This document shows, in pieces, positions 2,523-44,503 of a stretch of DNA of 64,000 bases (position 1 is the first letter of the stretch; each line of letters starts with the position of its first letter). Where the stretch lies: positions 248,001 to 312,000 of IMG/VR virus record IMGVR_UViG_3300031951_000003, one strand, 5' to 3'. The position numbers were made by a program, and so were the translations under genes. Under the pieces are notes generated by a model. That model ran no database searches. It worked only from the letters and a program-made list of their open reading frames with translations, and had not been told where the DNA came from.

Positions 2523-2584
2523 AAAAATTACATTTTGGCTCCGTTTTTCAATCCTGAATGAAACTTGTTTGTATTTATCTAAGT

Positions 2585-4720
2585 ATGTCAAATCCCGTTA
2601 TAATTATTGGTCAACAAAGAATTGTAAAAAAAACTGAGAAAATTTCTTTTTCCAATCCTACTGACTCTGTCATAACAATAAATTATCAGAAGAGTTCGAA
2701 TTTTCAGTGGGTTTACCAAGACGAAATACTACCTCAACAATCCAAAAGGATTTGGGCTGTTCCATCATCAATACAAATTCCAAATTACTTTTCTGAGAAT
2801 TTAGTTAGTCAAGATGACGGAGATATATTAAACATGATACAGACATATTCTTTGGGGGATGTTGTGAATGTCAACACCGAATCTTGTTATGTATATGAAT
2901 ACCCATATCCGTTTCCAGTCACTTTAAGAATTTCAAGTGAATATGCCTTACCACCCAACGTTAATATAGATTATAGAATTGCAACATACAATCCTCCTTA
3001 CATCGACCCAACAGTGTTCAACGGTATTCCTTGGACAAATTTAGTAACGAATTTTCAAGTTGGTGAGTGTCCCAATTATAACTTAGCAGGAACTGTTTAT
3101 ATCTCTTCTCCTTCTTTGGCTATCCAATATAGAGTGAGGGACTTATCTGACAATAGATTGAATTACTATTACATTATTTACCCTGAAACCTGTTTCGGAC
3201 CTGGAGAGGACCCTTGTAACATCAATTCAATACCTAGAATTTGGGACTTATTATTTTCTGGTTGTTCTATAGATGGTATTTCGATTTATTTATTTGAACC
3301 ATCCCAAATTCCCTTCGCTCAAGATGTTTGGATGGTATTGAAATCTCCTCCAGGAAACATAACCAACTGCACTACCCCAACTCCAACATCGACCGTTACA
3401 CAAACACCAACCAACACTCAAACACCAACAAATACTTCTACACAAACTCCAACGCCAACTAACACTCAAACACCTACCAACACCTCTACCCCGACTCCAA
3501 CGCCAACTAACACTCAAACACCTACCAACACTCAAACACCTACCAACACTCAAACACCTACACAGACCCCTCCTGTTTACTATTATTCAGCTCTTCTATG
3601 TGGGGACCCATCTTTCTTGAGATATTTCCGTTCGTCGAATCCAAATTTAACCGACAGTTGTTCTGTAATTTACGGTTATTGTGATGAGGCACCTCATACT
3701 GAATGTGGGGGAGTTCCTCAATGTTTTGATAATGTAAGCCCTTCGGTTGTCGTGAATTCGAATGATGTTTTAGAATGTTTCGATAGTTGTGAGTGTTGTC
3801 AGGGACTTTGTCCAACACCATCCCCAACTCCTACAATAAACCCGACCTCAACACCAACACCGACCACGACACCATCTCTAACCCCTACATTGACCTCAAC
3901 TCCTACATTAACTCCTACATCGACCTCGACCTCTACACCAACACCAACAACCAGTCCGACAGTCACAGGCACACTTACTCCTACACCAACACAAACGAGA
4001 CTTGCCGATTGTTATCAAAAAATTTATTTCGATGTAACATTAACTGAAACTTTTTTCAGTTACACAGATTGTTGTAGTGGAGAAGTAAATATCCTGAGCG
4101 TTGAAGCTGGTGTTGATTCTTGGGGTGCACCCGAGGGTTGTATAGAATATGGTTCAGTAACTGTTATTTCAGGTGAGTTCAATAATTTGTATTATAATTC
4201 ACCTTGTGCGTGTCCGACACCCACACCAACATTGACAGCCTCTAATACTCCAACTCCAACAACTACTAACACACCAACATTGACCGCTTCTAATACTCCA
4301 ACTCCAACAACTACTAGTACACCAACTAACTCACCAACAACTACCAACTCACCTACACCAACGCTTACACAGACTCCGACGGCCTCTGTAACTCAAACTC
4401 CTACACCAACACAAACAGAACCAACAGTTACACAGTCTGTAACACCATCTCAAACACCTACGCAATCATTTGTATTTTACCCTTATTCAGTTACCTCAGG
4501 ACAAACTTTTGTATCGATAGATTGTAATCCTGTTGTTTTAACTCAGACCTTATATGCCGCAGAATCAAGTTGGTATACAATTACCAAATTTTATTCAGAT
4601 TCAAACCTAACAACACCATACAATGGTAATGACTTGTATTATACCAACAACACTTTAGGTTCCTCCGATTGGTATAGAATCGCAACGAATGGTTCAATAA
4701 CTGATAGCTACGGTTGTTAA
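2585..4720 (+). CDS. Pro/Thr-rich (mucin-like), Cys-rich virion surface/fibre protein
   Basis: TPTPT/TQTPTN linkers separate Cys-rich modules; start moved to ATG 2585, 6 nt after TATTTAT. Confidence 0.75.
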   Translation: MSNPVIIIGQQRIVKKTEKISFSNPTDSVITINYQKSSNFQWVYQDEILPQQSKRIWAVPSSIQIPNYFSENLVSQDDGDILNMIQTYSLGDVVNVNTESCYVYEYPYPFPVTLRISSEYALPPNVNIDYRIATYNPPYIDPTVFNGIPWTNLVTNFQVGECPNYNLAGTVYISSPSLAIQYRVRDLSDNRLNYYYIIYPETCFGPGEDPCNINSIPRIWDLLFSGCSIDGISIYLFEPSQIPFAQDVWMVLKSPPGNITNCTTPTPTSTVTQTPTNTQTPTNTSTQTPTPTNTQTPTNTSTPTPTPTNTQTPTNTQTPTNTQTPTQTPPVYYYSALLCGDPSFLRYFRSSNPNLTDSCSVIYGYCDEAPHTECGGVPQCFDNVSPSVVVNSNDVLECFDSCECCQGLCPTPSPTPTINPTSTPTPTTTPSLTPTLTSTPTLTPTSTSTSTPTPTTSPTVTGTLTPTPTQTRLADCYQKIYFDVTLTETFFSYTDCCSGEVNILSVEAGVDSWGAPEGCIEYGSVTVISGEFNNLYYNSPCACPTPTPTLTASNTPTPTTTNTPTLTASNTPTPTTTSTPTNSPTTTNSPTPTLTQTPTASVTQTPTPTQTEPTVTQSVTPSQTPTQSFVFYPYSVTSGQTFVSIDCNPVVLTQTLYAAESSWYTITKFYSDSNLTTPYNGNDLYYTNNTLGSSDWYRIATNGSITDSYGC

Positions 4721-6811: not shown

Positions 6812-7159
6812 ATGATTGTTGAAATTAATGAAAATTATTTTAATGTTAAAACATTGGTTGACCCAAAATCCCAAGCTATTGGGATGATGAGAAGAAAATT
6901 CGATGATTCATTCAATGGTTTATTATTTTTAATGGGTGGTAAAAAACAATGTTTTTGGATGAAAAATTGTATCATCCCACTTGATATAATAATGATAAAA
7001 AATAATGTTATTGTCAATATACATCACGACTGTCCTCCTTGTTTAGAGGAACCTTGTCCGAGTTATTGTGGAAATGGAAATATCGTATTAGAACTCGAGG
7101 GTGGGACCTGTGAAATGTTAGGGATTGAAGCTGGAGATACGGTAGAATATATCTTCTAA
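6812..7159 (+). CDS. DUF192-family protein
   Basis: GMM..R...GLLF...FWMKNCIIPLDI...VLEL.GG...GDTV pattern; start revised to ATG 6812. Confidence 0.85.
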   Translation: MIVEINENYFNVKTLVDPKSQAIGMMRRKFDDSFNGLLFLMGGKKQCFWMKNCIIPLDIIMIKNNVIVNIHHDCPPCLEEPCPSYCGNGNIVLELEGGTCEMLGIEAGDTVEYIF

Positions 7160-9312
7160 ACTGTGAAATCTCTCACAAAAAATTTACTTGACCTCATTCT
7201 CAAAAATATTGTTTTTGGTTTCTCAGGCACTGTTCCAAAAAATGGTATTGTGGTTGAACCTATACTAATATCTGAAATACCACCTGCTTTAGCAACATCT
7301 ACTGCAAAGGTTGCACAATTCGAATCACCACCCTCTGTCAAATCTATGAATGAGTAACTTCTTGGTTTACTAGCCTCGTTCACAGAGTCTGTGAAATTAG
7401 GTAATCTCATAACATTTGTCCACATTGTTAGATTTGGACCGTCTTTGAAAGTTTTGGCTTTACAAGTTCTTGCAACATCACCAGCATTTGTGAAGTTTCC
7501 TTGTGAATCTATAGTCGCAATTTTCCCCATTTCAGTTTTCAAAACCTTTCCGTTTCCATCGTTATCGTAAGGTCCAAACTCATATAATTTTACAATACCT
7601 GTATGGTCAACTAAAATACAACCTCCATGTCCAGTGGCATATATTTTGATTTCTCTCTTTCCAACTTGTTCATTCAAACCTAAATAATCCTCTACCCACT
7701 CCAATGCTCTTCCGTGGAATGCTAATATGCGAGCAATCCAAGAATCTGTCATTGAAGGTCTATATTTCGGAAAAACAAAGAACATAAAAAAACCTGATTG
7801 ATTTTTGTCTATGGGTTGAAGTGACTTAAAAACAAAATCATCCTTCTGTCTTGCAATTGATAAACTTGGTACTCTAATGTCCCCCGAAGAGGGATTGTAC
7901 TGTTCCTCCAATTTTGACTCAGATTGAGAAATTTTTTCCTTTAACTTTCTGAAGAAATCTGAAGCCAACATTTTTGTAAATTTTACATATGGTGCATCTT
8001 CTCTTTCAGGGTCATATCTATATTGACCTTCGGGTGGTCTTTTGGACCTACCAAGATAGTTCAATCCACTTATATTCGTGATACACTTGTGACCTCCAGA
8101 GTTTGCGTTGATTAATTCCCAAGCACTTACATTAATATTATCTAAGATACTTTTTTCTTCATCTGTTAATGATGTAAATGGTTTTGACATCATTTCTTTA
8201 AGTCTATTCAAAGCCTCTTCTCCTCTTTCTTGTTCTGCAAATTTTTCACCATAAACCGCATTAAAATCCTCGAATGTAAACCCAACACTTTCAGGGTTAA
8301 CACCTGTTTCACTAATCCATTTTATCGTTGATAACGGGACTTTTCTTTCCTTGAGTTGAGCTTCATACTTTGCAATGACCTCTTTAGCAATCTCTCCGAG
8401 ATTAACACCTTTGAGCTTCCTTTCCTTTTTAAAAGGATTGCATGATACTTGAAGTAATCCCATCGGCCATGCCATGATGAGAAAGTCTGCTTCAGGGTTA
8501 TTTCTAAATGGGGTATACCTGTCATAAGAGCCAGGCTTAACCATACTACCTCCACCATATTGGTAAATGATATTATCTTCAACATGGGGAAATCCTTTCA
8601 TTTGTTTTGCATAATCTTGTGCGTGTTTTTGTAGTTCTTCTGGTTTTGGTGCATTTGTATCTTTCATCCATGTTTTGATGTTACTAAGTATATTCATCAA
8701 AGATGGTTCTGAATTCATTACAAGTCGCTCCAAAAATCCTTTCTTGTTTTTGAATGCTAAAATGAGTTTGTTTATAACGAAACCCAATAACATTTTGTTT
8801 CTTTGTAACGGCTTTTCTTTATCTAATCTAAAAAGATAATTGACTACCTCCTCGGGACTTATATCTTGTCTAGCGAAATCTGCGGAGTCAACAGTGTTAA
8901 TCAATAAAACGTCAGATGAGGGAAATAAATCTTTGGGTGAAATTATTTGTGAGATTGTTTCCACGTTTGAACGTGCTTGTCTAAATGATTTCGAAGCACC
9001 TTTTTCCGCACCTATTTGTTTGTCATGATGGTCCGTGTGGATAACGAACATTGGTTTACCATGAGCAAAGTCAACCAAAACAGGCATGGTATCACCCTTA
9101 GCGTCATTCTTCTTAACCGCAAATTCTTTTTCCCCATATTGTATTACGTGAACATCTACCACATCAATACCATTGTTCTCAAGGTATTTTTTCATCGCAA
9201 TAGCAGTAGTTACACCATCTAAATCTTGGTGGAAATATATTTCAGCCTTCGGGTATCTTTTTCTTAATGCGGAAATATCTCTTAAACCTGTCTCAGTTAT
9301 TAGGTTCTTCAT
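7156..9312 (-). CDS. DHH-family phosphoesterase fused to a C-terminal His...Asn-Cys (permuted papain-like) domain
   Basis: HQDLDG, LVDF, TDHH and GGH motifs; C-terminal GHGG...YEFGPY...SNCATF. Confidence 0.7.
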   Translation of the reverse strand: MKNLITETGLRDISALRKRYPKAEIYFHQDLDGVTTAIAMKKYLENNGIDVVDVHVIQYGEKEFAVKKNDAKGDTMPVLVDFAHGKPMFVIHTDHHDKQIGAEKGASKSFRQARSNVETISQIISPKDLFPSSDVLLINTVDSADFARQDISPEEVVNYLFRLDKEKPLQRNKMLLGFVINKLILAFKNKKGFLERLVMNSEPSLMNILSNIKTWMKDTNAPKPEELQKHAQDYAKQMKGFPHVEDNIIYQYGGGSMVKPGSYDRYTPFRNNPEADFLIMAWPMGLLQVSCNPFKKERKLKGVNLGEIAKEVIAKYEAQLKERKVPLSTIKWISETGVNPESVGFTFEDFNAVYGEKFAEQERGEEALNRLKEMMSKPFTSLTDEEKSILDNINVSAWELINANSGGHKCITNISGLNYLGRSKRPPEGQYRYDPEREDAPYVKFTKMLASDFFRKLKEKISQSESKLEEQYNPSSGDIRVPSLSIARQKDDFVFKSLQPIDKNQSGFFMFFVFPKYRPSMTDSWIARILAFHGRALEWVEDYLGLNEQVGKREIKIYATGHGGCILVDHTGIVKLYEFGPYDNDGNGKVLKTEMGKIATIDSQGNFTNAGDVARTCKAKTFKDGPNLTMWTNVMRLPNFTDSVNEASKPRSYSFIDLTEGGDSNCATFAVDVAKAGGISDISIGSTTIPFFGTVPEKPKTIFLRMRSSKFFVRDFTV

Positions 9313-10945: not shown

Positions 10946-10972
10946 TAAAAAAAGGAGGTTAGACCTCCTTTT
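10946..10972 (-). terminator. intrinsic terminator
   Basis: AAAGGAGGT-CTA-ACCTCCTTT then a T run, at the methyltransferase stop. Confidence 0.7.
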
Positions 10973-11822
10973 CAAAATCAAGTTCTGGTTGATTTTTTTT
11001 ATCTATAAAATGTTGAACTCTTTTTCGAGCGACTTCCGCATAATTAGGACTGAGTTCAATCCCTATCCACCTTCTATCTAATATCTCTGCCGCACATGCA
11101 CTTGTTCCACTTCCCATGAATGGGTCAAGAACCAAATCGTTCTTATAGGTTAATATTTTTATGGCTTTCGCTGGAATATCCATTGAGAAGGTTGCCTTGG
11201 TAAGTTGTTTTGTATCAGCGAAATAGTCCCATTGACCATATACTAAATCCATAAACTCACGTTTTTGCTCCTCAGTATACATTGTCTTATTTCTTTTTTT
11301 TCCATCCTCACTCTCGATTTCCTCAACAACTCCAACCCATTGCGGCTCCCCCTTAATCTTTTTGATTCTATCTTTTTTATATGCTAAAATCACACATTCT
11401 TTCGGATTGTAGATATAAGGAGAGGACGGTGACATCCATGAGCCCCAAGCAGTGGTCTTACTTCTATGTGGTGAGTTTTCATTCAGGTCAACCAGTCCGT
11501 AAAACTTATAACCAATTTTTTGCATGATTGACCATAATTCCGAAACCATGAAAATTCTCCCACCTTTATCTTGTCTATTGATTTCATAAGGTATGTTCAG
11601 GGCAATTCTTCCGTCGTCTTTCAAAAGTCTGAAAGCTTGGGTCAACCATTTTTTTGAAAATTCCTTGTAATCTTCAAATTGAACGTCGTCGTCATGAACA
11701 TCGTATTCGATTCCAACACCATACGGTGGTGATGTTACAATTAAATCAATTGATTTCTCAGGTAGGGTCTTCATGACTTCAACACAATCTCCTTGAGTTA
11801 TTTTTCTTATATAATTTTCCAT
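10959..11822 (-). CDS. DNA N4-cytosine/N6-adenine methyltransferase (beta class)
   Basis: IVTSPPY catalytic motif near the N-terminus; VLDPFMGSGT SAM-binding motif near the C-terminus. Confidence 0.92.
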   Translation of the reverse strand: MENYIRKITQGDCVEVMKTLPEKSIDLIVTSPPYGVGIEYDVHDDDVQFEDYKEFSKKWLTQAFRLLKDDGRIALNIPYEINRQDKGGRIFMVSELWSIMQKIGYKFYGLVDLNENSPHRSKTTAWGSWMSPSSPYIYNPKECVILAYKKDRIKKIKGEPQWVGVVEEIESEDGKKRNKTMYTEEQKREFMDLVYGQWDYFADTKQLTKATFSMDIPAKAIKILTYKNDLVLDPFMGSGTSACAAEILDRRWIGIELSPNYAEVARKRVQHFIDKKNQPELDFEKEV

Positions 11823-18910: not shown

Positions 18911-19754
18911 ATTCATCAACATATTATCCGATATTTTATCTGAAGCTAAAAGATATAAATTCACACCTGAATTACTACAAAAAATTAATTCGGTCGTAGA
19001 AAACCTTTGGAATGACCGAAACAAAAATTACGGTAATAAGAAAGAGGTTGTTGATGTTATCCCCTTCAAAACTGCAAATGGTGTTGACGGTTTGGTAAAA
19101 GTGATTGTTAATCCAAGATTGAAATACTTGGGATTTATGGGAACTAAACCGAGTAAATCTTATGACCCCGCAGACATTTATATCGAGGTAAATCCAAAAT
19201 ATTACGAATCTAAGAAAAATCTTTATCTTACAATCTATCATGAGATGATACACGCCAGTGACCCAACTCAAAGTAGTTCTTGGTCTCCAAAATATATGTT
19301 GAGCTATGATGAAAAGTCTGATGAAAAGTATTGGGGTCATCCAATAGAATTCTTTGCGATATCAAATGAGTTCTTGGAAGGTCTTGTAAGAGAATTTGAA
19401 AGAAGAGCAAAAAGATTAAGAAAAATTGAAAACAAAGAGATTTTGGATAAGTCTTTGAAAAATATTCTCAACTATTTTGCCAAGGGTGAGCCATTAAATA
19501 AGCTCAGTCAAGACATTCTTTTCAGAATCAATGACGAACACGTAGGACAAGATTCATTCAAAGTTCTTAAGAATCTGACCGCAGATATGCCCCATTTGGC
19601 GGACTTACTTCCTGAAAGAGGTGAGGAACCATATTATTTACACTATGTCGAATTGATTAAGAAATTTAATCCTGAAATATGGAAAAAGTTCCTAAGTATG
19701 TTCTACAATACAACTTTCGAGATTAGAGACATTATCAACAAAAACTATAAATAA
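18903..19754 (+). CDS. HExxH zincin-like protein
   Basis: IYHEMIHA plus downstream HPIEFFA. Confidence 0.65.
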   Translation: MPKFINILSDILSEAKRYKFTPELLQKINSVVENLWNDRNKNYGNKKEVVDVIPFKTANGVDGLVKVIVNPRLKYLGFMGTKPSKSYDPADIYIEVNPKYYESKKNLYLTIYHEMIHASDPTQSSSWSPKYMLSYDEKSDEKYWGHPIEFFAISNEFLEGLVREFERRAKRLRKIENKEILDKSLKNILNYFAKGEPLNKLSQDILFRINDEHVGQDSFKVLKNLTADMPHLADLLPERGEEPYYLHYVELIKKFNPEIWKKFLSMFYNTTFEIRDIINKNYK

Positions 19755-19783
19755 AAAAAAGGGATTTTTAAATCCCTTTTTTT
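19753..19783. terminator. bidirectional terminator between convergent genes
   Basis: A-run, GGGATTT-TT-AAATCCC-type hairpin, T-run. Confidence 0.8.
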
Positions 19784-22110
19784 CCGCTTGCTAACATTTC
19801 CAATTTTTCTAATTTCCTTTCATGGAAATCTAAAAGGGTGGATTGTTCTTTGATTGCCTCTAAACAAGCTGATATAATCGTTTCAAATCTTATTGATAAC
19901 ATTGTGGTTTCTGGGTCTTCATAAACGAGTTCAGGAAATACCAACTGCAACTCTTGTGCAATAAAACCTATCTGAAGTAACTCGGGTCTTTCATCATCTT
20001 TTATTAGATGGTAGGAAACACCTCTAGTCTTTAATATTTTGTCCAAACTATCTGTAATTGGTCTGATATTAGTTTTGAACCTTAAATCCGATGGTCCAGG
20101 TGCACCTGATGCACCTTGTGCCCCTGTTGGTCCTGTGCCACCTTGTGGACCAGTTCCACCACCTCCACCTTGAGCACCTTGTGGACCTGTTCCTCCTGTT
20201 CCACCACCAGTCCCTTGAGCACCTTGATTACCCGTAGGACCGGTTGGTCCTCCAGGACCTTGAGCACCTTGTGCACCTTGGTTTCCATTACCTTGTGATG
20301 GACCTTGGGCTCCTTGAGAACCAGTTCCACCTCCTCCACCAGGAGGTCCTGTGTGACCTTGAGCTCCCTGTGGACCTCGGTTACCCGTTGGTCCGCCAGG
20401 ACCCTGAGCACCTTGTGCTCCGCCAGGACCCTGAGCACCTTGTCCACCTTGAGAACCTTGAGCTCCTTGAGCTCCTGTTGCACCACCACCACCTTGAGAA
20501 CCTTGTCCTCCCTGTGAACCTTGGGCTCCTTGGTTTCCACCACTGCCTTGAGCTCCTTGCGCACCTTGTCCTCCTGCCGGTCCTTGTGCTCCTTGGTTAC
20601 CTTTACCACCTTGAGCTCCTTGCGCACCTTGTCCTCCTGCCGGTCCTTGTGCTCCTTGGGCTCCTCCTGGGCCTTGAGCTCCTTGCGCACCTTGTCCTCC
20701 TGTTGGTCCCTGAGCTCCTTGGTTACCTTTACCACCTTGTGCTCCTTGAGCACCTTGTCCTCCTTGAGAACCTTGTGAACCTGTGGCACCTACAGGCCCC
20801 TGTGCTCCTTGTGCTCCCTGTCCACCTTGTGAACCTTGACCACCTTTGGCACCTTGTGAACCTTGTCCTCCTTGAGCTCCTTGTCCACCTGTTGGTCCTT
20901 GTGCTCCTTGATTACCACCCGAACCTTGCGCTCCTTGAGCTCCTTGTCCACCTGTTGGTCCTGTAGCACCCTTACCACCTTGAGAACCTTGTCCTCCTTG
21001 AGCTCCTTGTCCACCTGTTGGTCCTTGAGCTCCTTGATTACCACCCGAACCTTGCGCTCCTTGAGCTCCTTGTCCACCCTGTGAGCCTTGGGAACCTGTG
21101 GCACCCGCAGAACCTACTGGACCTTGTGCTCCTTGGCCTCCCTGCGAACCTTGTGAGCCCGTGGCCCCTTGTGCACCTACTGGCCCTTGAGCTCCCTGTC
21201 CACCTTGTGAACCTTGGGAACCTGTGGCTCCTGCTGAACCAACGGGACCCTGAGCTCCCTGTCCACCTTGTGAACCTTGTGAACCTATGGCACCTTGTGA
21301 ACCTTGTCCACCTTGAGCTCCTTGTCCTCCCTGTGAACCTTGGGAACCTGTAGCTCCTTGTGACCCAACTGGTCCTTGTGCTCCTTGACCTCCTTGTGAC
21401 CCTTGGGAACCAACCGCTCCCTGAGAACCTGTGGCACCTTGAGCACCTTGACCTCCTTGTGAACCCTGAGAACCTGTAGCACCTTGTGACCCTACCGGCC
21501 CTTGAGCACCTTGTCCACCTTGTGAACCCTGAGAACCGACCGCTCCCTGTGAACCTGTGGCACCTTGAGCACCTTGACCTCCTTGTGAACCCTGAGAACC
21601 AGTATCGCCTTGTGCACCTATTGCACCCTGAGCACCTTGACCACCTTGTGCGCCTTGTGGACCTACAGCACCTTGGGAACCTTGTGAGCCAGTAATACCT
21701 TGAGCCCCTGTTGGACCTTGTGCTCCTTGACCCCCTTGTGAACCTTGAGCACCTTGACCACCTGTCACTCCCTGGGAACCTTGATTTCCTTGAGCACCTT
21801 GTCCCCCTTGAAAACCAATACTACCTTGAGCACCAGTTGGTTCTCTATTACCAACCCATCCTGTAGAGTTGATAAGTGTTCCTGCTGAATTTTTTAAACT
21901 AGTTGTTATCTTGAGGTTACTATTGTAAGTTACAAATGAAGGTTTATCACTTCTCCAAGCAAGATAAACAATATTACTATTATCTGTCCAATGCAAATGT
22001 AGTAGTGGTGAATCGTCTTCAAGCTTCAAATATGTTGAGGTTGAGCCAGAATCAACGAATTCGACCGTGGGAAACGCATAATCAGGATATATTATTATAT
22101 TTTCAGACAC
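19768..22110 (-). CDS. collagen-like fibre chain C with C-terminal intramolecular chaperone (peptidase S74 type)
   Basis: ~580 aa of Gly-X-Y; SDLRFKTNI cleavage motif; IGFIAQE. Confidence 0.9.
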
Positions 22111-24532
22111 TTAAATTATCTTTTAAAATTTTTATTCTCTCCATTATTGAGATTATTCTTTTCTGTTGTTCTTGAAGTGCACCAATACCCAAACTTACCA
22201 TAAGACCATATTCAACTGATTTAAAGCCCTCCTCGTCTGTCCAAACAACTTCTGGGACGATATCTTCAATTTGCTGTGCAATAAAACCTATTGTTTCACC
22301 AGTAAATGCACTTGGAAGAGATATTGCACGGTTCATTGATATTTTAGGATGGTCAACCCATTCGAATCTAACACCCTCAATACCTTTAACTTTTTCTAAT
22401 ACATTTGTTAAGGATTGAATATTATCTTTAAGTCTTTGGTCTGAAGGTGGACCCTGAGCTCCTTGAGCTCCTTGACCTCCTGTTGGACCAGTTCCACCCT
22501 GAGGACCTGTAGGTCCTACGTTACCTTGAGCACCTTGACCACCTTGGCCCCCACCTGAACCTGTAGCACCTTGGGCACCTTGACCCCCTTGACCACCACC
22601 CGAGCCTTGAGCCCCTTGGGCTCCCGTAGCTCCTGGTCCTCCACCAGGCCCCACTGCTCCTTGGGCACCTTGTCCTCCTGTTCCTCCTGTAGGTCCTGTT
22701 GGTCCCTGTGCTCCTTGGAATCCTGTTGCACCTCCCCCTCCTGTTCCACCTTGAGCCCCAACAGGACCCTGAGCGCCTTGAGCTCCCTGAGCACCACCCT
22801 GTGCTCCTTGAGCACCTGTGGAACCACCTCCACCTTGGCTTCCTTGAGCACCTGTAGTTCCACCTTGAGCTCCTTGAGCACCTGTTGGTCCTTGAGCACC
22901 TTGGTTACCTTGTGCACCTTGGTTACCACCTTGAGCTCCTTGGGCTCCTTGTGAACCTTGGACACCAGGAGCACCTTGTGCACCCGTATTTCCTCCTTGG
23001 GCTCCTTGAGCTCCTTGTGAACCTTGGACACCAGGAGCACCTTGTGCACCTGTTGAAGCTCCTTGAGCTCCCTGAGCCCCTTGAGAGCCCTGAACACCAG
23101 GAGCTCCCTGTGCTCCCGTTGAACCACCTTGAGCTCCTTGGGCTCCTTGGGCACCCTGATTACCTGTCGCACCTTGGGCACCTGTTGAACCACCTTGAGC
23201 ACCCTGTGAACCTTGTGCCCCTTGTGCTCCAGTATTACCTTGAGCTCCTGTATTGGCTCCTTGTGCTCCTTGAGCACCTTGTGGTCCTTGTGCACCTTGG
23301 TTTCCTTGTGCACCTGTATTGGCTCCTTGTGCTCCTTGAGAGCCTTGAGCTCCTTGAGCACCTGTATTACCTTGAGCTCCTGTATTGGCTCCTTGTGCAC
23401 CTTGAGCACCTTGTGGTCCTTGTGCACCTTGGTTTCCTTGTGCACCTGTTGAAGCACCCTGTGCACCTTGCGCTCCCTGTCCTCCTTGTGAGCCTTGACC
23501 ACCTTGAGCACCTGTTGTTCCTCCTTGGGCTCCTTGTGCTCCTGTTCCACCTTGAGCTCCTTGACCTCCTTGTGCCCCCGTGGTTCCCCCTTGGGCTCCT
23601 TGAGCACCCTGTCCTCCTTGTGAACCTTGAGCTCCTTGGGCTCCTGTTGTTCCTCCTTGTGCTCCTTGAGAACCTTGTGCACCTTGTGCTCCAGTTGAAC
23701 CCTGAGCACCTGTTGTTCCTCCTTGAGCTCCTTGAGCTCCTTGTCCTCCTTGTGCCCCCTGTGCACCCTGAGCACCTGTTGTTCCTCCTTGGGCTCCTTG
23801 TGCACCTTGTCCTCCTTGGGCTCCTTGTGCACCCTGAGCACCTGTATTAGCTCCCTGAGCTCCTTGTGAACCCTGTCCTCCTTGTGCTCCTTGAGCTCCT
23901 TGAGCACCAATTGTTCCACCTTGAGCACCTTGAGCACCTTGTCCTCCTTGTGCACCTTGTGAACCCTGAGCACCTGTGTTAGCTCCTTGAGCACCTTGAG
24001 CTCCTTGACCACCTTGAGCTCCTTGACCACCTTGAGCTCCCGTATCCGCTCCTTGAGCTCCCTGTGCTCCCTGTCCACCCGTAGCACCTTGAGCTCCTTG
24101 AGGTCCTATCGAACCTTGTGAACCTTGAGCACCTACATTTCCTATTGCTCCCTTAGCACCTTGAGAACCTTGCGCTCCTTGAGCACCTATTGACCCCTGA
24201 GAGCCTGTAGTTCCTGAAGCACCTTGTGCTCCTTGAGCACCGGTAAATCCAGATATACCCTCAGCAGGTCCTACCCATTCGCCAACTTCATTAATCATTT
24301 CTATACCACCCACATACAATCCATATATTCCTCCGGTGACCTTTGCACCATCAACGAGTAATTCAGCTCCGATAGTTGCTATGTTACTTTTTGTTGTTGA
24401 TGAAACTTGGATATTTCCAGAACCATTAACAGATAATTGTATTTTGTCCGCGGATGAAATCCCTTCAAATTCCATATGAGGGTTAGGGTTTCCACCACTT
24501 TTACCATTGGGATATATTATAACGTCAGACAT
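22103..24532 (-). CDS. collagen-like fibre chain B (periodically interrupted) with S74-type chaperone
   Basis: ~605 aa of Gly-X-Y with about 20 Gly-X-Y-Z stutters; SDQRLKDNI; IGFIAQQ. Confidence 0.9.
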
Positions 24533-27156
24533 TAATTAAGAAGGTTTTCAAGTTCATTTATTTGTTTTTCGATATCTGATATAAATACTTGTTGCTCTTT
24601 AATACCTTCAATCAAAACGGCGTTCATTCTATTATATTCAACAGTATAAAAACCATCAGAACCGATTTTAACTACTGTCGGGAAAAATTCTTTAACATTT
24701 TGAGCTATCAGACCAATCGAGTGAAGCTTGTTATTGTTTAATCTTTTAATGTAATCGCTTTTCGTCAACTTTTCATTCCAATCGTATTCTACGACTCTAA
24801 GTTCAAGAATTTTTTCAAGTGTATTATCAAGTGATTTAACATTATATTTGACTCTTCTATCAGAGCAGCTGCCCCCGTATGTAAAATAACCATTGAAGTT
24901 AGTAGAACCATAATACAAATATGTAACACCAATCGTAATTGAACCATAGGTCCACTGAAATGTTGAGTTTTGACAAGTTGTAACATCTGAAGCGAGTTGG
25001 ATGCTAAAATTTGCTTGCCAGTTAATATCTTGGGAATAAACTGTTCTGTTTTGACATGCCCCCGCGTTTACACAAATGGCGTAATAAGAATCACCACATA
25101 GATTCTGAACAAAACAAGAGGTGAACGAGCCAGGTCCTGTTGCACCTTGTGCACCTTGGGCTCCTTGTCCTCCCGTAGGACCCGTAGGACCCGTAGGACC
25201 ACCCGACCCTTGTGCACCTTGGTTACCCGTAGGACCAGTAGGACCACCTGGTCCTTGTGCACCTTGGTTACCTTGAGGTCCTGTTACACCTGGTGCACCT
25301 TGAGCACCTTGACCTCCGTTTGGACCTTTCGGTCCAGCAGCTCCTTGCGCCCCTTGGCTACCCGTAGCACCCCCACCACCTTGAGGACCTTGAGCACCTT
25401 GAGCACCCTGACCTCCTGTTCCACCTTGTGGTCCTGGAGCACCTTGAGCACCTTGATTTCCTGTTGCTCCTTGTGCACCTGGATGACCTGTAGCACCCTT
25501 ACCACCCTGTGAACCCTGAGCACCTGTTGCTCCCTGAGGACCAATTGCACCTGTATTACCCCCTGCACCTTGTGCACCTTGTGGTCCTGTGGCACCTTGT
25601 GCTCCTGGATGTCCTGTTCCTCCACCAGAACCTGTTGGACCTTGTGGTCCTGTGGCTCCCTGTGCTCCTGGATGTCCTGTTCCTCCACCTGAACCTTGAG
25701 GACCTTGTGGTCCTGTGGCTCCTTGTGCTCCTGGATGTCCTGTTCCTCCACCCGAACCTGTTGGACCTTGTGGTCCTGTGGCTCCTTGTGCTCCTGTATG
25801 ACCAACGGCACCTTGAGCACCTTGAGGTCCTGTTGGTCCTGTTGCTCCTTGAGCTCCTGGATGTCCTGTGGCTCCTTGAGCACCCGTCGAACCTGCATTA
25901 CCTGTAGCACCTTGAGCACCAGGGTGACCTGTGTTTCCTGTTGGCCCCTGTGCACCTTGTGGTCCTGTAGCACCTTGAGCACCCGCATGACCCGTCGCAC
26001 CTTGTGCCCCAGTAGAACCAGCATTCCCCGTAGCACCTTGTGCACCTGGATGACCTGTATTTCCTGTTGGTCCCTGTGCTCCTTGTGGTCCTGTAGCACC
26101 CTGAGCACCAGCATGACCCGTCGCACCTTGTGGTCCTTGAGCCCCTTGAGGACCTGTAGCACCTTGAGGTCCTACTGCACCTGTAGAACCTGTAGGTCCT
26201 TGTGCACCTGTATTACCTGTGGCTCCTTGTGGGCCAACATTTCCTTGTGCTCCTGTATTACCTTGTGCTCCTGTGTTACCTGTGGCTCCTTGTGGTCCTA
26301 CGTTACCTGTAGCCCCGGTAGCTCCCTGAGCCCCTGTGTTACCTGTGGCCCCTTGTGGTCCAACATTTCCTTGTGCTCCTGTATTACCTTGTGCTCCTGT
26401 ATTACCTGTGGCCCCTTGTGGACCAACATTTCCTTGTGCTCCTGTATTACCTTGTGCTCCTGTGTTACCTGTAGCTCCTTGAGCACCTGTATGACCCTGT
26501 GCACCTGTATTTCCTTGTGCTCCTGTATTACCTGTGGCCCCTTGTGGTCCAACATTTCCTTGAGCTCCCGTGTTACCTTGCGCTCCTGTGTTACCTGTGG
26601 CTCCTTGTGCACCTGTATTACCCTGTGCACCTGTATTTCCTTGTGCACCGGTATTTCCCGTGGCTCCTTGTGCACCTGTATTACCCTGTGCACCCTGGGT
26701 TGTGCCTTTAGCACCCTGTGCCCCTTGGGGTCCAACCTGACCTTGTGCACCTGTATCACCTTGTGCACCTTGTATTCCTTGTAACCCTTGTGCACCCAAA
26801 TTTCCCTGTGCACCCGTATCACCCTGTGCACCTGTATTGCCCTGCGCACCTTGGTGACCCTGAGCCCCTTGAGCTCCTGCAATACCTGTGGTTGGTCCAA
26901 TCCAATCCAAAGTTCCATCAATTACTTGAACTGAGTCAATAGCAAAATAATCAGAAACATTAAGCGTTACAACACCAATTGTTTGGCTAGAACGGTCAAT
27001 AACTAATTGATTAGTAACTGATGCTGAGCTAAGATTAATCTTACCCGTTGGCACAACTCTCCAAACACTTGTTCCACTGTTAACCCAATTTATATAAGGG
27101 ACTCTGTCTGGTGTTCTAGAAATGGAATTACTCGGAACTATTAAAATATCACCCAT
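24532..27156 (-). CDS. collagen-like fibre chain A with a Cys-containing tip domain and S74-type chaperone
   Basis: ~586 aa of Gly-X-Y; 88-aa insert; SDRRVKYNV; IGLIAQN. Confidence 0.9.
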
Positions 27157-27176
27157 GAATGTTTTTTTCTATTTAT

Positions 27177-27183
27177 ATAAATA
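27177..27183 (-). promoter_or_regulatory. putative phage late promoter (TATTTAT) for the collagen operon
   Basis: The same motif precedes most structural/head-type genes in the window. Confidence 0.6.
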
Positions 27184-27256
27184 CAAGTTGAATAGAATTT
27201 GTATTCATTTTTATTTTGGAAAATTTTATAATTGACACTATTATAATTATTAATTT

Positions 27257-33030: not shown

Positions 33031-33870
33031 CTAATAATTCAATATCAAGAGCTCTTCACCCATATTTTGTTTCGTCCCTTTTTTCGCAGCAGCTGCTTTA
33101 GCAAACTTCTTCTTTTCCCATCTGAATCTATCTGTTGAATACCATTGACTTAAAAGGTCAAAATCGTAGTAAGATAAACTAAACTTACTTTGGACTGAAT
33201 TCAACACATTTGCCAATCTTTCGTGGTCTGCTCTGTCGAAATCATGGTTGGAATAGTAATTTTCAGTTTTCCAATATGGTGGGTCCAAGTAAATATAAGT
33301 TGACGGGGAGTCGTATTTCTCTATAACCTTTTGGAAATCCATATTTTCAACATGAGTAATCTTATTAAAGTGTTCGACCCATTTTGGATTAGATAGTTTG
33401 TCTCTGAAAGACAAATATTTTGAACGATACTTTCCCTTCAAATCTATAAAGTTAGAAGTTTCAGGTTTACTTCCACTGAACACTTGAGTGACAATGTAAA
33501 CGTATTTTGCAGCAACTTCGTAGTCAGGGTAATTTATAGTAAATCCCGATGAAAATAATTCAGTTTGATACTCTCTGAATCTATCCTTGTAACTTATGTC
33601 TGTAACTAATTTACCAAACTCTTGAACCGGTATGGTGTCCAAAACTCTTTGGAGTTCAGCAGGATTCTGAACACATTGAAATAGATTGTAGTTTAGTGGG
33701 TTGAAGTCATTGTAGACCACTCGTTTGAGGTTTGTGAATTTTTCTAAATTCATGTTGAAATAACACCAAAACATTCCCCCGAATGTTTCGACATATGTTT
33801 CCATATCCTCAGGATAGTATTCGACTATCCATTTTCCAATTTTTGATTTTCCTCCGATATAACTTAACAT
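33031..33870 (-). CDS. dam: Dam-type DNA adenine methyltransferase
   Basis: YIGGKS, YVETFGG, VYNDFN, YLDPPY. Confidence 0.9.
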   Translation of the reverse strand: MLSYIGGKSKIGKWIVEYYPEDMETYVETFGGMFWCYFNMNLEKFTNLKRVVYNDFNPLNYNLFQCVQNPAELQRVLDTIPVQEFGKLVTDISYKDRFREYQTELFSSGFTINYPDYEVAAKYVYIVTQVFSGSKPETSNFIDLKGKYRSKYLSFRDKLSNPKWVEHFNKITHVENMDFQKVIEKYDSPSTYIYLDPPYWKTENYYSNHDFDRADHERLANVLNSVQSKFSLSYYDFDLLSQWYSTDRFRWEKKKFAKAAAAKKGTKQNMGEELLILNY

Positions 33871-34093: not shown

Positions 34094-34234
34094 ATGGCAT
34101 GTAGTAGTTGTAAATCAAATCGTCCAATAAATAGAGTTAAATGGGGCGTGTTAATTTTAGGAAGTTATATTGTTTTCTCATCTGTTTACGGAACAATCGA
34201 AATATTCAAAATTATAATAGAATTTTTTAAATAG
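34094..34234 (+). CDS. small MACSSCK membrane protein (46 aa)
   Basis: N-terminal CxxC plus one TM; not in the ORF track. Confidence 0.65.
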   Translation: MACSSCKSNRPINRVKWGVLILGSYIVFSSVYGTIEIFKIIIEFFK

Positions 34235-35147
34235 GTCTCTCGAATTTCAAATTGAGTTTAACATAAAAATCACCACCTTTATATCCTTTTCCTCTTAATC
34301 TTAAAGGTTTAGATGTGTCTATTATTTTTGGTGCTTGTAAATTTAAATCACCATCTGGATGTGGAATTAAAAATTTATCATTTTGTATTTGTTCCAAATT
34401 CAGTGTCAAATTATAAACCAAATCTGAATTAATCTTTTCAAACCCATCTTTCGGGACCATTTCCACTTGAATTACCAAATCCCCCATACCTCCGTTTTTG
34501 AAATCACCCAAGTTTGGTAGTTTGAGAAACTGTCCACTATCAATACCTTGTGGGACTTTGACCCTAATGCTATGAATGGTCTGACTTGTTCCTTTTCCAC
34601 CACACAAATAACACCTTTCAACTAAAATGGTTCCTTGACCATTGCAGTTCCCGCAAATTGTCCTTATTTGTTGAACCATGAATCCTGTCCCAAATGTTTT
34701 GATAAAGAAACCTTGACCACCGCAAGACCCACAGGTTTGATGCTGGCCCCCGTTACCTTGACAAGAATTACACGGAATATCTCTACTATATTGAATTTCC
34801 TTTTCCCCACCCAAATAGGATTCAATTGGTGAAACTTGAAGTCTCACAACTTTGTCTGGTGCATGCCTCGGTCTTTGTCCTTGGAAATGAGGATTGCGAC
34901 CAAACATGTTATCAAAGAAACTCTCAAAATTGGTTCCTTGATATGGGTTGGACTTTTGATTATTATACTGAGCTCTTTTTTCTCTGTCTCCCAAAACTTC
35001 GTAAGCTTCGTTTATCTCTTTAAATTTTTCAGCACCATCGGGATTGATGTCAGGATGAAATCTTTTTGAGAGGTTTCTGTAACTCTTTTTGATTTCATCT
35101 TCTGAGGCATTCTCTTCAACTTCTAGAATTTTGTAGTAATTTTTCAT
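34227..35147 (-). CDS. dnaJ: DnaJ chaperone
   Basis: J domain with HPD, four CxxCxGxG motifs, C-terminal domain. Confidence 0.95.
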   Translation of the reverse strand: MKNYYKILEVEENASEDEIKKSYRNLSKRFHPDINPDGAEKFKEINEAYEVLGDREKRAQYNNQKSNPYQGTNFESFFDNMFGRNPHFQGQRPRHAPDKVVRLQVSPIESYLGGEKEIQYSRDIPCNSCQGNGGQHQTCGSCGGQGFFIKTFGTGFMVQQIRTICGNCNGQGTILVERCYLCGGKGTSQTIHSIRVKVPQGIDSGQFLKLPNLGDFKNGGMGDLVIQVEMVPKDGFEKINSDLVYNLTLNLEQIQNDKFLIPHPDGDLNLQAPKIIDTSKPLRLRGKGYKGGDFYVKLNLKFERPI

Positions 35148-43705: not shown

Positions 43706-44503
43706 TTACATGTAGTCGAACAAACTACCCGTTTCATTCCTAAGTTTTCTGAGGGCTTTTTCTTTGATTTGTCTAACCCTTTCCTTAGTTAAATCAAAGT
43801 CATTACCAATATCTTCTAATGTTCTTGTTGAGCCAGATAACCCGAAATAATCTTGGATGATTACCTTTTCTCTTTCATCGAGAACATCGAGAAGTGAAAG
43901 TAATTTATCTTTAAGTGTTTGCTCTGAAGAAAGTCCTGAGTCCGCACTTTCAGCATTTGGATTTGGAACAACATCCAAAAGCGTATCTCCCTCTTCGTTA
44001 AGTGGGCTATCCAAGTTCACAATAGATGGTAGGTTGAGAAACTTCTCAGGAAGTTCAGTCCCCACCTTGTCAAGTTCTTTTTTCGCCTTATGTAGTTCTT
44101 GAACCACATTTACTGGTAGTCGAATTGTTCTAGCATTTTCATTCAAGGATTGAAGTATGGATTGTCTAATCCACCACACAGCGTATGATATGAATCTAAG
44201 ATTTTTTGACCAATCAAAATTCTCAATCGCTTTCATAAGACCATAATTACCTTCAGCGATAAGGTCAGGTAAATCTAACCCTTGGTTTTGATATTGTTTG
44301 GAAACAGTAATCACAAACCTTAAGTTACCCTCGAGAATTTCTTTTTTTATTTCTTCCTTCTCTTGGATTGAGATTCTACCTGATAACATTTTTCTAGAAA
44401 GTTCTCTTTCTCTCTCTACCGTCATTACCTTAAGTTTTCTTACTTCTTTAAGGTAGGCGTTAATTTCTTCCTGATTAATTGGGATTACACTTTTTTCCTT
44501 CAT
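43706..44503 (-). CDS. sigma-70 family RNA polymerase sigma factor, Bacteroidota RpoD-like (no region 1.1)
   Basis: NLRFV...QGLDLPDLIAEGN.GL.KA; RFISYAVWWIRQSI; TLEDIG..FDLTKERVRQIKEKAL. Confidence 0.93.
   Translation of the reverse strand: MKEKSVIPINQEEINAYLKEVRKLKVMTVERERELSRKMLSGRISIQEKEEIKKEILEGNLRFVITVSKQYQNQGLDLPDLIAEGNYGLMKAIENFDWSKNLRFISYAVWWIRQSILQSLNENARTIRLPVNVVQELHKAKKELDKVGTELPEKFLNLPSIVNLDSPLNEEGDTLLDVVPNPNAESADSGLSSEQTLKDKLLSLLDVLDEREKVIIQDYFGLSGSTRTLEDIGNDFDLTKERVRQIKEKALRKLRNETGSLFDYM

What the first reader, a model, noticed from the sequence alone, without database searches (positions are those of the whole stretch)
19768..27156. Candidate 1:1:1 heterotrimeric phage collagen: three divergent chains with matched triplet counts, each with its own autocleaving C-terminal chaperone
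Seen: three translationally coupled genes behind one TATTTAT box. Each has a ~90-aa N-domain that starts M-x-x-(I/V/N)-I-(I/V)..P and ends in W-(V/I)-G, then a Pro-poor Gly-X-Y rod, then an S74-type chaperone with the SD.R.K motif intact. By hand count the rods span about 580, 605 and 586 aa. After subtracting the ~20 extra stutter residues of the middle chain they are about 193, 195 and 195 Gly-units, although their repeat sequences differ ([12 protein letters not shown]..., GGTTGAQ..., GATGNTGAQ...). All three share a 7-unit super-repeat. Only the first-transcribed chain carries an extra tip domain. Established: S74-type chaperones trimerise fibres and then cleave themselves off; characterised prokaryotic and phage collagens are generally described as homotrimers, whereas animal heterotrimeric collagens select chains through cleavable C-propeptides. 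Inference: matched length is hard to maintain in recombination-prone repeats unless the chains must be in register, so this may be a procollagen-like heterotrimer (~170 nm at 0.29 nm per residue) with a single asymmetric receptor tip.
Basis: partly seen in the sequence, partly recalled or inferred. Interest (0 to 1): 0.88.

Follow-up and report, generated by a model that had tools for sequence, protein, structure and literature searches.

The report
Three length-locked phage collagen chains
A 321-kb uncultured freshwater phage and about 36 relatives carry three different collagen-rod genes whose triplet counts change together from 98 to about 365, and whose self-cleaving end domains carry matching charges, so they may form the first natural heterotrimeric collagen known outside animals.

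Summary
Three translationally coupled minus-strand genes each encode a ~90-aa N-domain, a Gly-X-Y rod and a Peptidase_S74 chaperone. These are A (24532-27156), B (22103-24532) and C (19768-22110). The rods hold 195, 195 and 193(+1 Gly-less) triplets. All three share a 7-triplet super-repeat in the same phase. B has 20 extra single residues. Only A has a tip.

In 37 related phage clusters the trio is always present. The three rod lengths co-vary from 98 to ~365 triplets (r = 0.99 over the first 19 loci), usually within 0-2 triplets. Two ~92%-identical phages differ by exactly 14 triplets in all three genes. Mismatches are mostly one or two repeat units, and several occur between near-identical genomes.

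What is matched is the triplet count, not the physical length. In the chaperone's nucleating coiled coil, one g/e' pair is like-charged in A (E/E) and B (R/K) and opposite in C (K/E). It is never like-charged in 28 single-gene S74 controls. One cyclic ABC order makes every pair attractive.

A 1:1:1 heterotrimer is the best explanation (~0.6) but co-assembly is unproven. B's periodic extra residues remain awkward for it.

The parts
27157..27256 (-). Upstream intergenic region with TTGTATTTATATAAATAG (about 27169-27186). It is the only non-coding gap before the three genes and has no Shine-Dalgarno sequence.
   Evidence: Promoter function was not tested; the sigma-70 scan is uninformative.
26887..27156 (-). 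Chain A N-domain (aa 1-90), predicted all-beta, no known family
25129..26886 (-). Chain A collagen rod: 195 Gly-X-Y triplets plus 1 inserted Gln (586 aa)
24865..25128 (-). Chain A tip domain, about 88 aa, Cys-rich and hypervariable between phages. It is found in A only.
24535..24864 (-). Chain A Peptidase_S74 chaperone (SDRRVK). The C-terminal helix has g20/e25 = Q/E here and E/E in most relatives.
24260..24532 (-). Chain B N-domain (aa 1-91)
22445..24259 (-). Chain B collagen rod: 195 triplets plus 20 single-residue insertions, one every 7 triplets (605 aa)
22106..22444 (-). Chain B Peptidase_S74 chaperone (SDQRLK), directly after the last triplet. g20/e25 = R/K.
21835..22110 (-). Chain C N-domain (aa 1-92). 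The GTG start overlaps the end of B by 8 nt.
20089..21834 (-). Chain C collagen rod: 193 triplets plus one Gly-less QGN triplet (582 aa). The Ser of the last GPS triplet is the S74 cleavage Ser.
19771..20088 (-). Chain C Peptidase_S74 chaperone (SDLRFK). g20/e25 = K/E, and core position d17 is polar.
19753..19784 (-). Terminator-like hairpin with a T-run, straddling the C stop codon, between convergent genes

Best explanation
The three genes most likely encode the three chains of one 1:1:1 heterotrimeric collagen-like virion fibre, about 170 nm long.

Proposed mechanism.
1. Coupled translation supplies equal amounts of A, B and C. (Gene arrangement shown; equal output inferred.)
2. The C-terminal helices of the three different S74 chaperones associate into one triple coiled coil. 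Its conserved g/e' charge pattern is A acidic/acidic, B basic/basic, C basic/acidic. This pattern selects the ABC combination in one cyclic order and disfavours AAA and BBB. (Pattern shown; selection inferred.)
3. The coiled coil sets the register at the C-terminal ends of the rods, which then zip up towards the N-terminus. This is why the three chains must hold the same number of triplets. (Inferred.)
4. Each chaperone then cuts itself off at its Ser. The result is a rod with three different N-domains at the virion end and a single tip domain, from A, at the far end. (Motifs shown; cleavage inferred.)

The fibre type, whether tail or head, is not established.
For: - Exact match in the window: 195/195/193+1 triplets, with the same 7-triplet phase and the same sub-block layout in three rods. 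Their DNA is no more alike at aligned positions than at shifted ones.
- Co-variation: across 53 loci forming 37 phage clusters, the trio is present wherever the contig reaches. In the first 19 loci, lengths run from 98/99/98 to about 362/365/365 with pairwise r = 0.99-0.997; 12 of those 19 match within 2 triplets. A permutation test on 18 of them gives p < 1e-5.
- Independent changes: a tree of the terminal domains shows many length changes, each concordant in all three genes.
- Closest pair: L056 (144/143/142) and L136 (158/157/156) have flanks ~92% identical. L136 gained exactly 14 triplets in each of the three genes, in the same rod region.
- Triplet count is what is matched, not residue span. 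B is always longer by its inserted residues. A carries a PA14 insert in L067 and other inserts in L055, yet its triplet total still matches C.
- The super-repeat period is shared by the three chains of each phage: 7 or 14 in most, 13 in all three chains of L061, 28 in all three of L104.
- In every locus, B and C end at the collagen once cleaved. Only A has a tip.
- Charge code: the S74 domain ends in a central triple coiled coil, where folding is thought to start (PMC4690869). At heptad pair g20/e25, A is like-charged in 20 of 36 and never opposite. B is like-charged in 35 of 36. C is opposite in 30 of 31. Of 28 single-gene S74 controls, 14 are opposite and none like-charged. Mean score at this layer: ABC +2.47, ACB -0.6, AAA -1.6, BBB -3.0.
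- Precedent: three consecutive paralogous genes of virophage DSLV2 form a 1:1:1 heterotrimeric fibre (PMC12724248).
Against: - No physical or modelled evidence of co-assembly. The tools offered no multimer prediction.
- B carries one extra residue every 7 or 14 triplets in every lineage. In a mixed helix each of these must bulge out. In a B homotrimer they would sit naturally at one level.
- Length mismatches of about 13-15 or 28-29 triplets occur in some loci (L059, L060, L067, L177, L129, L148, L164), so exact matching is not absolute, unless these are assembly collapses.
- C scores +2.8 as a homotrimer at the tested layer.
- The charge argument rests on one heptad layer, on a heptad assignment read from the sequence, and on counts not corrected for shared ancestry.
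- Coincidence of interruption positions between chains was not significant once regional clustering was controlled for.
- All characterised prokaryotic collagens are homotrimers (PMC8968730).
Confidence: 0.6

Rival explanations
1. The genes encode three separate homotrimeric fibres (A3 with a trimeric tip; B3 and C3 as tipless rods). These must have equal length because they work side by side on the virion, for example bundled or anchored at neighbouring sites.
For: - All characterised S74 fibres and prokaryotic collagens are homotrimers (PMC8968730; PMC4690869).
- B's periodic single-residue insertions are easy to fit when all three chains have them at one level.
- One-unit mismatches are seen between near-identical genomes, so they may be tolerated.
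- C is self-compatible at the tested coiled-coil layer.
Against: - The match is in triplet number, often to within one triplet (about 0.9 nm in 85-310 nm). It is not in physical length: B3 would be about 3% longer, and A's globular inserts are not compensated.
- Small changes of 1-4 triplets are also mirrored in all three genes (L069, L070, L068, L061, L136).
- Tipless B3 and C3 rods have no obvious function.
- No lineage has lost or duplicated a member, unlike usual receptor-binding fibre sets.
- A and B have like charges at g20/e25, a state found in none of 28 single-gene controls.
Confidence: 0.25
2. The chains form another mixed assembly, not a single ABC helix. Examples are A and B chains in 2:1 or 1:2 trimers alongside C homotrimers, or homotrimeric rods held together only through hetero-oligomeric N-domains or chaperones.
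For: A/B charge complementarity together with C self-complementarity fits A/B pairing with C acting alone. A-C lengths agree slightly better than either agrees with B.
Against: C's length tracks A and B as tightly as they track each other (r = 0.997 with both A and B). C is tipless. C's polar core residue at d17 is less suited to a C-only core. Overlapping stop and start codons suggest equal dosage.
Confidence: 0.1
3. No functional coupling exists. Equal lengths are left over from an ancestral triplication, or are artefacts of assembling repeats.
For: The three genes are paralogs with the same architecture. Repeats are prone to assembly error. Some mismatches look like one collapsed unit.
Against: Lengths differ 3.7-fold between phages and always change concordantly. 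The ~92%-identical L056/L136 pair differs by 14 triplets in all three genes. Assembly errors would create mismatches, not matches. Eight independent assemblies of the window phage are identical. Between-gene rod DNA identity (56-63%) rules out recent gene conversion.
Confidence: 0.03

Closest known systems
Phage fibres and tailspikes with a C-terminal Peptidase_S74 intramolecular chaperone (K1F endosialidase, T5 pb1, phi29 gp12, S16-type gp37), including collagen-like phage tail fibres
   Same: The Pfam S74 domain is above cut-off in all three chains. The Ser...Lys (S, +5 K) motif and the C-terminal heptad helix are present. A's tip plus S74 is about 30% identical to the C-termini of T-even distal long-tail-fibre subunits. 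PHROG collagen tail-fibre families also hit.
   Different: The known examples are single genes forming homotrimers. Here three diverged paralogs (about 30% identity) are kept as a fixed trio. Their coiled-coil charges are complementary between chains rather than within one chain. Two of the three have no fibre domain other than collagen.
Animal heterotrimeric collagens and C1q (procollagen I, type IV, C1q A/B/C)
   Same: Three distinct chains with equal triple-helix length. A C-terminal non-collagenous domain could select and register the chains, and in procollagen it is removed afterwards. One-chain-only interruptions occur: from my own recollection, not checked here, the C1q A chain has a single inserted Thr.
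   Different: There is no sequence relationship in the terminal domains. Removal here would be self-catalysed by S74, not by an external protease. The rods lack hydroxyproline chemistry, are Pro-poor and Gln/Thr/Ala-rich, and are nearly uncharged, so axial charge pairs in the rod cannot specify register.
Pasteuria ramosa collagen-like protein gene triplets (groups 1-2-3; McElroy 2011, as described in PMC13233619)
   Same: Three collagen-like genes of three paralog groups sit in a fixed order and the same orientation.
   Different: It is a bacterial spore-surface system, whose solved homolog of the C-terminal domain is BclA (PMC7743900), not S74. No length co-variation or chain-selection code is reported in the passages read. 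Its trimer composition is also unproven.
Virophage DSLV2 tripartite tail fibre (PMC12724248)
   Same: Three consecutive paralogous fibre genes whose products co-purify as a 1:1:1 heterotrimer.
   Different: It is a gp37-like beta-structured fibre of about 16 nm. It is not collagen and has no S74 chaperone.

Membership tests
Collagen triple-helix repeat proteins (PF01391) | Uninterrupted or nearly uninterrupted Gly-X-Y repeats scoring above the Pfam cut-off | tested here: met
   Scores of 243, 115 and 136 bits against a cut-off of 27.2. Counts are 195, 195 and 193 triplets.
Collagen triple-helix repeat proteins (PF01391) | The chains actually fold into a triple helix | not testable with these tools
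   This needs circular-dichroism melting, protease resistance or electron microscopy.
Peptidase_S74 intramolecular chaperone (PF13884) | Domain match above the curated cut-off at the C-terminus | tested here: met
   Scores of 52.3, 48.8 and 60.0 bits against a cut-off of 22. There is also a weak PDB match to 6f45.
Peptidase_S74 intramolecular chaperone (PF13884) | Cleavage Ser with Lys five residues downstream (as Ser1264/Lys1269 in T5 pb1) | tested here: met
   SDRRVK, SDQRLK and SDLRFK. In the 19 A-chain sequences, S, D and K are invariant. The T5 motif is taken from PMC4690869.
Peptidase_S74 intramolecular chaperone (PF13884) | C-terminal helix with heptad pattern able to form the central triple coiled coil | tested here: met
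   Positions a (idx 7, 14, 21, 28) are hydrophobic. Positions d (3, 10, 17, 24) include a conserved Gln at d10 in all three paralogs. AlphaFold2 models a 33-residue terminal helix.
Peptidase_S74 intramolecular chaperone (PF13884) | Self-cleavage after trimerisation | not testable with these tools
   This needs expression of wild type and a Ser-to-Ala mutant.
Heterotrimeric collagens (functional class) | Distinct chains with equal triple-helix length, kept equal through evolution | tested here: met
   Pairwise r = 0.99-0.997 over the first 19 loci, spanning 98 to about 365 triplets. L056/L136 show a concerted gain of 14 triplets in all three genes.
Heterotrimeric collagens (functional class) | A non-collagenous domain that selects the chain combination | tested here: inconclusive
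   The g20/e25 charge code favours ABC and disfavours AAA and BBB, but C is self-compatible and only one layer was assessed.
Heterotrimeric collagens (functional class) | Physical 1:1:1 co-assembly in one helix | not testable with these tools
   No multimer prediction was available. This needs pull-down and native mass spectrometry.
Pasteuria-type CLP gene triplets | Three collagen-like genes of three paralog groups in fixed order and orientation | tested here: met
   The order is A-B-C in nearly all loci and B-A-C in the L062/L153 lineage. L104 has a third order, with A in the middle and an unrelated gap before the last gene.
Pasteuria-type CLP gene triplets | Homologous terminal domains (BclA-like C-terminal domain) | tested here: not met
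   The C-termini here are S74 chaperones. The N-domains have no family match. This is an analogy, not membership.

The most novel reading that the evidence does not exclude
These phages make a true ABC heterotrimeric collagen. It would be the first natural one outside animals. Chain choice, cyclic order and register would be set by a charge code in three diverged, self-removing S74 chaperones. Selection would be strong enough that every change in rod length is copied into all three genes. B's periodic extra residue, and in some lineages C's periodic missing residue half a period away, would be built-in single-chain bulges that give the rod regular flexible or marked sites every 6-12 nm.
Probability: 0.55. 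Interest if true: 0.9.

Novelty: new variant of a known kind. Interest (0 to 1): 0.82.

Why it matters
Making collagen heterotrimers with defined composition and register in bacteria is an unsolved practical problem. The review read here says prokaryotic collagens are homotrimers and that correct stoichiometry and stagger are hard to obtain (PMC8968730). If these phages do assemble ABC rods, their three S74 domains would be a natural, self-removing, hydroxyproline-independent tag set for heterotrimerisation and registration.

The family is also a rare natural experiment. It has dozens of lineages, a 3.7-fold range in length and single-unit mutational steps. It shows how selection keeps recombination-prone repeats in separate genes in step.

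For phage biology, it would add a fibre with a single asymmetric receptor tip to a field where fibres are assumed to be homotrimers.

Tried and rejected
- Positional homology between rods at DNA level. Identity at aligned rows equals identity at shifted rows (56-63%), so there has been no recent gene conversion.
- Coincidence of interruption positions between chains. A circular-shift control gave p = 0.0006 for A versus C. With local shifts that preserve the clustering of interruptions near the C-terminus, offset 0 is not exceptional. This is not used as evidence. Individual striking cases are reported only as anecdotes: B and C interruptions exactly 7 triplets out of phase in the L059/L063/L177/L178 clade, and A and C interruptions coinciding in L177.
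- AlphaFold2 of A's tip plus S74 as a monomer: mean pLDDT 68.8, with the tip at 66-86. Foldseek against the PDB gave nothing below E = 0.1. I wanted the distance between the tip's N- and C-termini, which an ABC model requires to be short.
- AlphaFold2 of the N-domain: pLDDT 79.6, eight beta-strands. No significant match in the PDB or BFVD; only weak tail-fibre hits at E > 0.2.
- Pfam and PHROGs on the N-domains and the tip: nothing.
- Host or cultured relative: no DNA or N-domain match in 50,697 phage records. The genome-contig scan returned only short or mis-binned MAG contigs.
- Net charge of whole N-domains and rods: no clear pattern.
- Pro or hydrophobic residues in A and C at the level of B's insertions: no consistent enrichment. 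The unit phases of the three chains are locked to each other (C's GG-triplet falls 3 triplets before B's insertion in 75% of cases), but shared ancestry could explain that.
Full report
**What is in the window.** Three adjacent minus-strand ORFs fill 19768-27156. They are A (24532-27156, 874 aa), B (22103-24532, 809 aa) and C (19768-22110, 780 aa, GTG start). The region stands out at 48-54% G+C against a background of about 33%. The A stop and the B start share a base (TAATG), and the end of B overlaps the C start by 8 nt. The only non-coding gap is upstream of A. It holds TTGTATTTATATAAATAG about 20 nt before the ATG and has no Shine-Dalgarno sequence. A terminator-like hairpin straddles the C stop codon. 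Pfam finds Collagen and Peptidase_S74 above the curated cut-offs in all three proteins. The cleavage motifs are SDRRVK, SDQRLK and SDLRFK.

**Exact counts.** A has 195 triplets plus one inserted Gln (586 aa). B has 195 triplets plus 20 inserted single residues, mostly Thr, exactly every 7 triplets from triplet 24 to 157 (605 aa). C has 193 triplets plus one Gly-less QGN triplet (582 aa). Written in rows of seven triplets, all three rods show the same plan. There are 21 irregular triplets, then twenty 7-triplet units in the same phase, then about 34 irregular, more Pro-rich triplets. Triplets 84-111 have a 14-triplet period in all three chains.

At DNA level, units within one gene are 70-98% identical. 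Between genes, aligned rows are no more alike than shifted rows (56-63%). The rods are therefore old paralogs with no recent gene conversion between them. The N-domains are about 23% identical (A versus B, E = 1e-6; C is barely detectable). The S74 domains are about 30% identical. The rods are Pro-poor (7.7, 2.8 and 5.2%), rich in Gln, Ala and Thr, and have only 2-6 charged residues each.

**Source.** The window is part of a 321-kb uncultured jumbo phage (IMG/VR UViG_3300032050_000001). Eight independent assemblies are base-identical over the 20 kb around the locus, so the repeat counts are reproducible. No cultured phage has similar DNA, a similar neighbouring protein or a similar N-domain. 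Related contigs come mostly from metagenome records. The few that are binned sit in Betaproteobacteria and Aquiluna MAGs, taxa I know as freshwater organisms; the sample sources themselves were not looked up. The host is unknown. An SprB-repeat protein and the absence of Shine-Dalgarno sequences hint at Bacteroidota.

I used a neighbouring gene and then an alignment of A-type C-termini to fetch related loci from viral and metagenome collections. I parsed every collagen gene in them. I counted triplet-equivalents as follows: the rod span, minus each one-residue insertion, with each two-residue interruption counted as a triplet lacking one residue.

Fifty-three loci with at least two complete rods collapse to 37 phage clusters at 95% or more identity in the terminal domains. 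Wherever the contig reaches far enough there is exactly one A (tip plus S74, C-terminus of about 190-205 aa), one B (periodic extra residues, 112-116 aa C-terminus) and one C (103-113 aa C-terminus). The order is nearly always A-B-C.

Examples of A/B/C triplet-equivalents:
- L072: 98/99/98
- L065: 118/120/118
- L063: 142/142/141
- L056: 144/143/142
- L069: 154/154/154
- L070: 155/155/154
- L068: 158/158/157
- L061: 161/161/160
- window: 195/195/194
- L066: 215/216/215
- L071: 225/224/223
- L064: 270/270/269
- L153: 361/356/362
- L104: 362/365/365

Over the first 19 loci the pairwise correlations are 0.990-0.997, and 12 of the 19 match within 2 triplets. Shuffling lengths among 18 of these loci never approaches the observed agreement (mean within-locus range 5.4 against 67; p < 1e-5). 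A tree of the concatenated terminal domains shows that sister lineages often differ greatly in length, for example 144 versus 174, 215 versus 270 versus 118, and 195 versus 225. The difference is always concordant in the three genes, so there have been many independent concerted changes.

The clearest case is L056 versus L136. Their flanks are about 92% identical and their proteins 89-95% identical. L136 has 42 extra residues in A, 22+22 in B and 30+12 in C. That is exactly 14 triplets in each gene, all in the same part of the rod.

**Exceptions.** Mismatches exist:
- L059: 157/172/170
- L060: 131/160/145
- L067: 173/159/172
- L177: 152/139/166
- several partial loci

Most are close to 13-15 or 28-29 triplets, which is one or two super-repeat units. 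Some separate almost identical genomes. L176, L182 and L183 are 99.5% identical, yet B is 172 or 159 and C is 171 or 158, through 117-123-nt indels. L063 and L190 are 98.9% identical, yet C is 141 or 127. These are either collapsed repeats in short-read assemblies or real, short-lived variants. Either way, mismatches appear as very recent differences, while older divergence is matched. That is what purifying selection on equal length predicts.

**What exactly is matched.** It is the number of triplets, not the physical length. B is longer than A by 6-31 residues in the matched loci because of its inserted residues, yet its triplet count equals A's. In L067, A's rod is split by a PA14 domain (Pfam E = 2.7e-11) into 91+82 triplets, which still equals C's 172. 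In L055, A has two globular inserts, and its collagen segments still sum to about 134-139 against 140 and 139. Small changes of 1-4 triplets are also mirrored in all three genes (154, 155, 158, 161 and the L136 set). The super-repeat period is shared within a phage too: 7 or 14 in most, 13 in all three chains of L061, and 28 in all three chains of L104. Separate flexible fibres that only need a similar reach would not need agreement to within one triplet (about 0.9 nm). They would also be expected to compensate for inserts.

**The ends of the chains.** In B and C the cleavage Ser follows the last triplet directly (GPP-SD, GP-SD), so the mature chains would be an N-domain plus a bare rod. Only A keeps a distal domain. 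This domain is about 88 aa with conserved Cys residues and is otherwise hypervariable, as expected of a receptor-binding part.

**A chain-selection signature.** In T5 pb1 the S74 chaperone ends in a central triple coiled coil made by the three C-terminal helices. Inter-helix salt bridges are thought to secure registration, and folding is proposed to start there (PMC4690869).

I aligned this helix for 31-37 sequences of each paralog. Heptad positions a and d are hydrophobic, and all three paralogs have a conserved Gln at d10. C has a polar residue (Ser, Lys or Asn) at d17, where A and B have Ile.

At the g20/e25 pair:
- A is E or Q at g20 (35 of 36) and E at e25 (34 of 36).
- B is R (36 of 37) and K (35 of 37).
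- C is K or R (30 of 31) and E (31 of 31).

A is therefore like-charged in 20 of 36 sequences and never opposite. B is like-charged in 35 of 36. C is opposite in 30 of 31. As a control I took 28 distinct single-gene S74 helices from unrelated loci fetched in the same scans. Fourteen are opposite-charged, 14 are not doubly charged and none is like-charged. Fisher tests give 7e-10 for A and 1.5e-12 for B, not corrected for shared ancestry.

I scored this layer within 30 loci, with +1 for an attractive pair, -1 for a repulsive pair and a maximum of 3:
- cyclic order A-B-C: +2.47
- reverse order: -0.6
- AAA: -1.6
- BBB: -3.0
- CCC: +2.8

The whole C-terminal 40 residues are acidic in A in 19 of 19 loci and neutral to basic in B in 18 of 19. 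This is the pattern expected if an ancestral self-complementary pair was split among paralogs to enforce a mixed trimer. It rests on one layer and on a heptad assignment read from the sequence.

**Interpretation.** The best explanation is a 1:1:1 heterotrimeric collagen-like fibre. Its chains would be chosen and registered by three complementary self-cleaving chaperones (confidence about 0.6).
- Shown: the gene arrangement, the motifs, the exact counts, the co-variation, the triplet-level nature of the match, tipless B and C, and the charge pattern.
- Inferred: that the helices pair as ABC, that the rods fold in one helix, and that cleavage occurs.

The main difficulty is B's extra residue every 7 or 14 triplets. 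In a mixed helix each must bulge, whereas a B homotrimer would accommodate them at one level. From my own recollection, not checked here, the C1q A chain has a single inserted Thr in a heterotrimeric helix, so a one-chain insertion is not unprecedented. Twenty to forty-two periodic ones would be new.

The main rival is three homotrimeric fibres kept equal in length (about 0.25). It explains B's insertions. It does not explain the single-triplet precision, the lack of compensation for inserts, the tipless rods or the like-charged helices. Other mixed assemblies are possible (about 0.1). Chance, ancestry alone or assembly artefact is excluded by the concerted changes (about 0.03).

**Comparison with known systems.** Collagen-like phage fibres and S74 chaperones are well known, and membership of both Pfam families is met. 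The fixed trio, the length coupling and the inter-chain charge code are not described in anything I found. [quoted passage not shown] The nearest analogies are:
- Pasteuria ramosa CLP gene triplets: same gene arrangement, different terminal domains, trimer composition unproven (PMC13233619).
- The DSLV2 virophage fibre: three consecutive paralogs shown to co-purify 1:1:1, but not collagen (PMC12724248).
- Animal procollagens and C1q: same logic, no homology.

**Dead ends.** Interruption positions in different chains do not coincide more than local clustering predicts. Monomer AlphaFold2 models of the tip plus S74 and of the N-domain gave moderate confidence and no fold assignment. No host could be assigned.

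Noticed in passing
L067:8450-8995 (A-chain rod); also L055:7307-10378, L134/L143/L144, L194 and L138: In some relatives the A chain alone carries globular domains inside or before its rod. L067 has a PA14 carbohydrate-binding domain (Pfam E = 2.7e-11). L055-like phages have inserts of about 240 and 90 aa with no family match. The L062/L153 lineage has a similar ~350-aa extension on B instead.
   Followed up: partly
L059, L063, L177, L178 (rods of B and C): In this clade B has one extra residue every 14 triplets and C has a two-residue interruption every 14 triplets, exactly 7 triplets out of phase with B. Per period the chains have 42, 43 and 41 residues. In L177, A's Gly-less triplets (86, 100, 114, 129) coincide with C's interruptions (86, 100, 114, 128).
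   Followed up: partly
L104:2568-16204: This is a divergent member with rods of about 1050 aa. All three chains carry the same 28-triplet pattern of four two-residue interruptions, offset between chains by about 7, 10 and 11 triplets. The gene order differs, and an unrelated 2.2-kb gap separates the second and third genes.
   Followed up: no
L069 versus L068: The terminal domains are 90% identical but the rods only about 60% identical. The rods therefore evolve much faster than the ends, or are exchanged, while still keeping equal length.
   Followed up: partly
window 34227-35147 (-): The phage encodes a full-length DnaJ: J domain, CXXCXGXG zinc-finger region and C-terminal domain.
   Followed up: no
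window 43706-44503 (-); 10959-11822 (-); 33031-33870 (-): The phage encodes its own sigma-70 family factor (regions 2 and 4) and two DNA methyltransferases (an N6_N4 type and a Dam-like D12 class).
   Followed up: no
window 57338-60187 (-); 7156-9312 (-): A 949-aa protein has SprB repeats, which are typical of gliding Bacteroidota. A 718-aa protein has a TseH-like domain, with a weak below-cut-off hit to a DHH N-terminal domain. These are possible host-range or cell-wall-acting virion proteins.
   Followed up: no
window 2558-4720 (+); 60219-61589 (-); 61776-63911 (-): Three large paralogous proteins all match the same PHROG of unknown function (phrog_15511).
   Followed up: no
window 47375-49753 (-) and 51122-51901 (-): An SbcC/Rad50-like ATPase (weak match) and a calcineurin-like phosphoesterase lie close together. 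They may be an SbcCD-type nuclease pair. A primase-like protein lies at 52991-53908.
   Followed up: no
L018-L022, L025-L027, L029-L030, L033-L046: About two dozen further phage contigs encode the neighbouring 537-aa protein (35-49% identity) but have no collagen/S74 trio within 10 kb. In those relatives the trio is either elsewhere in the genome or absent.
   Followed up: partly
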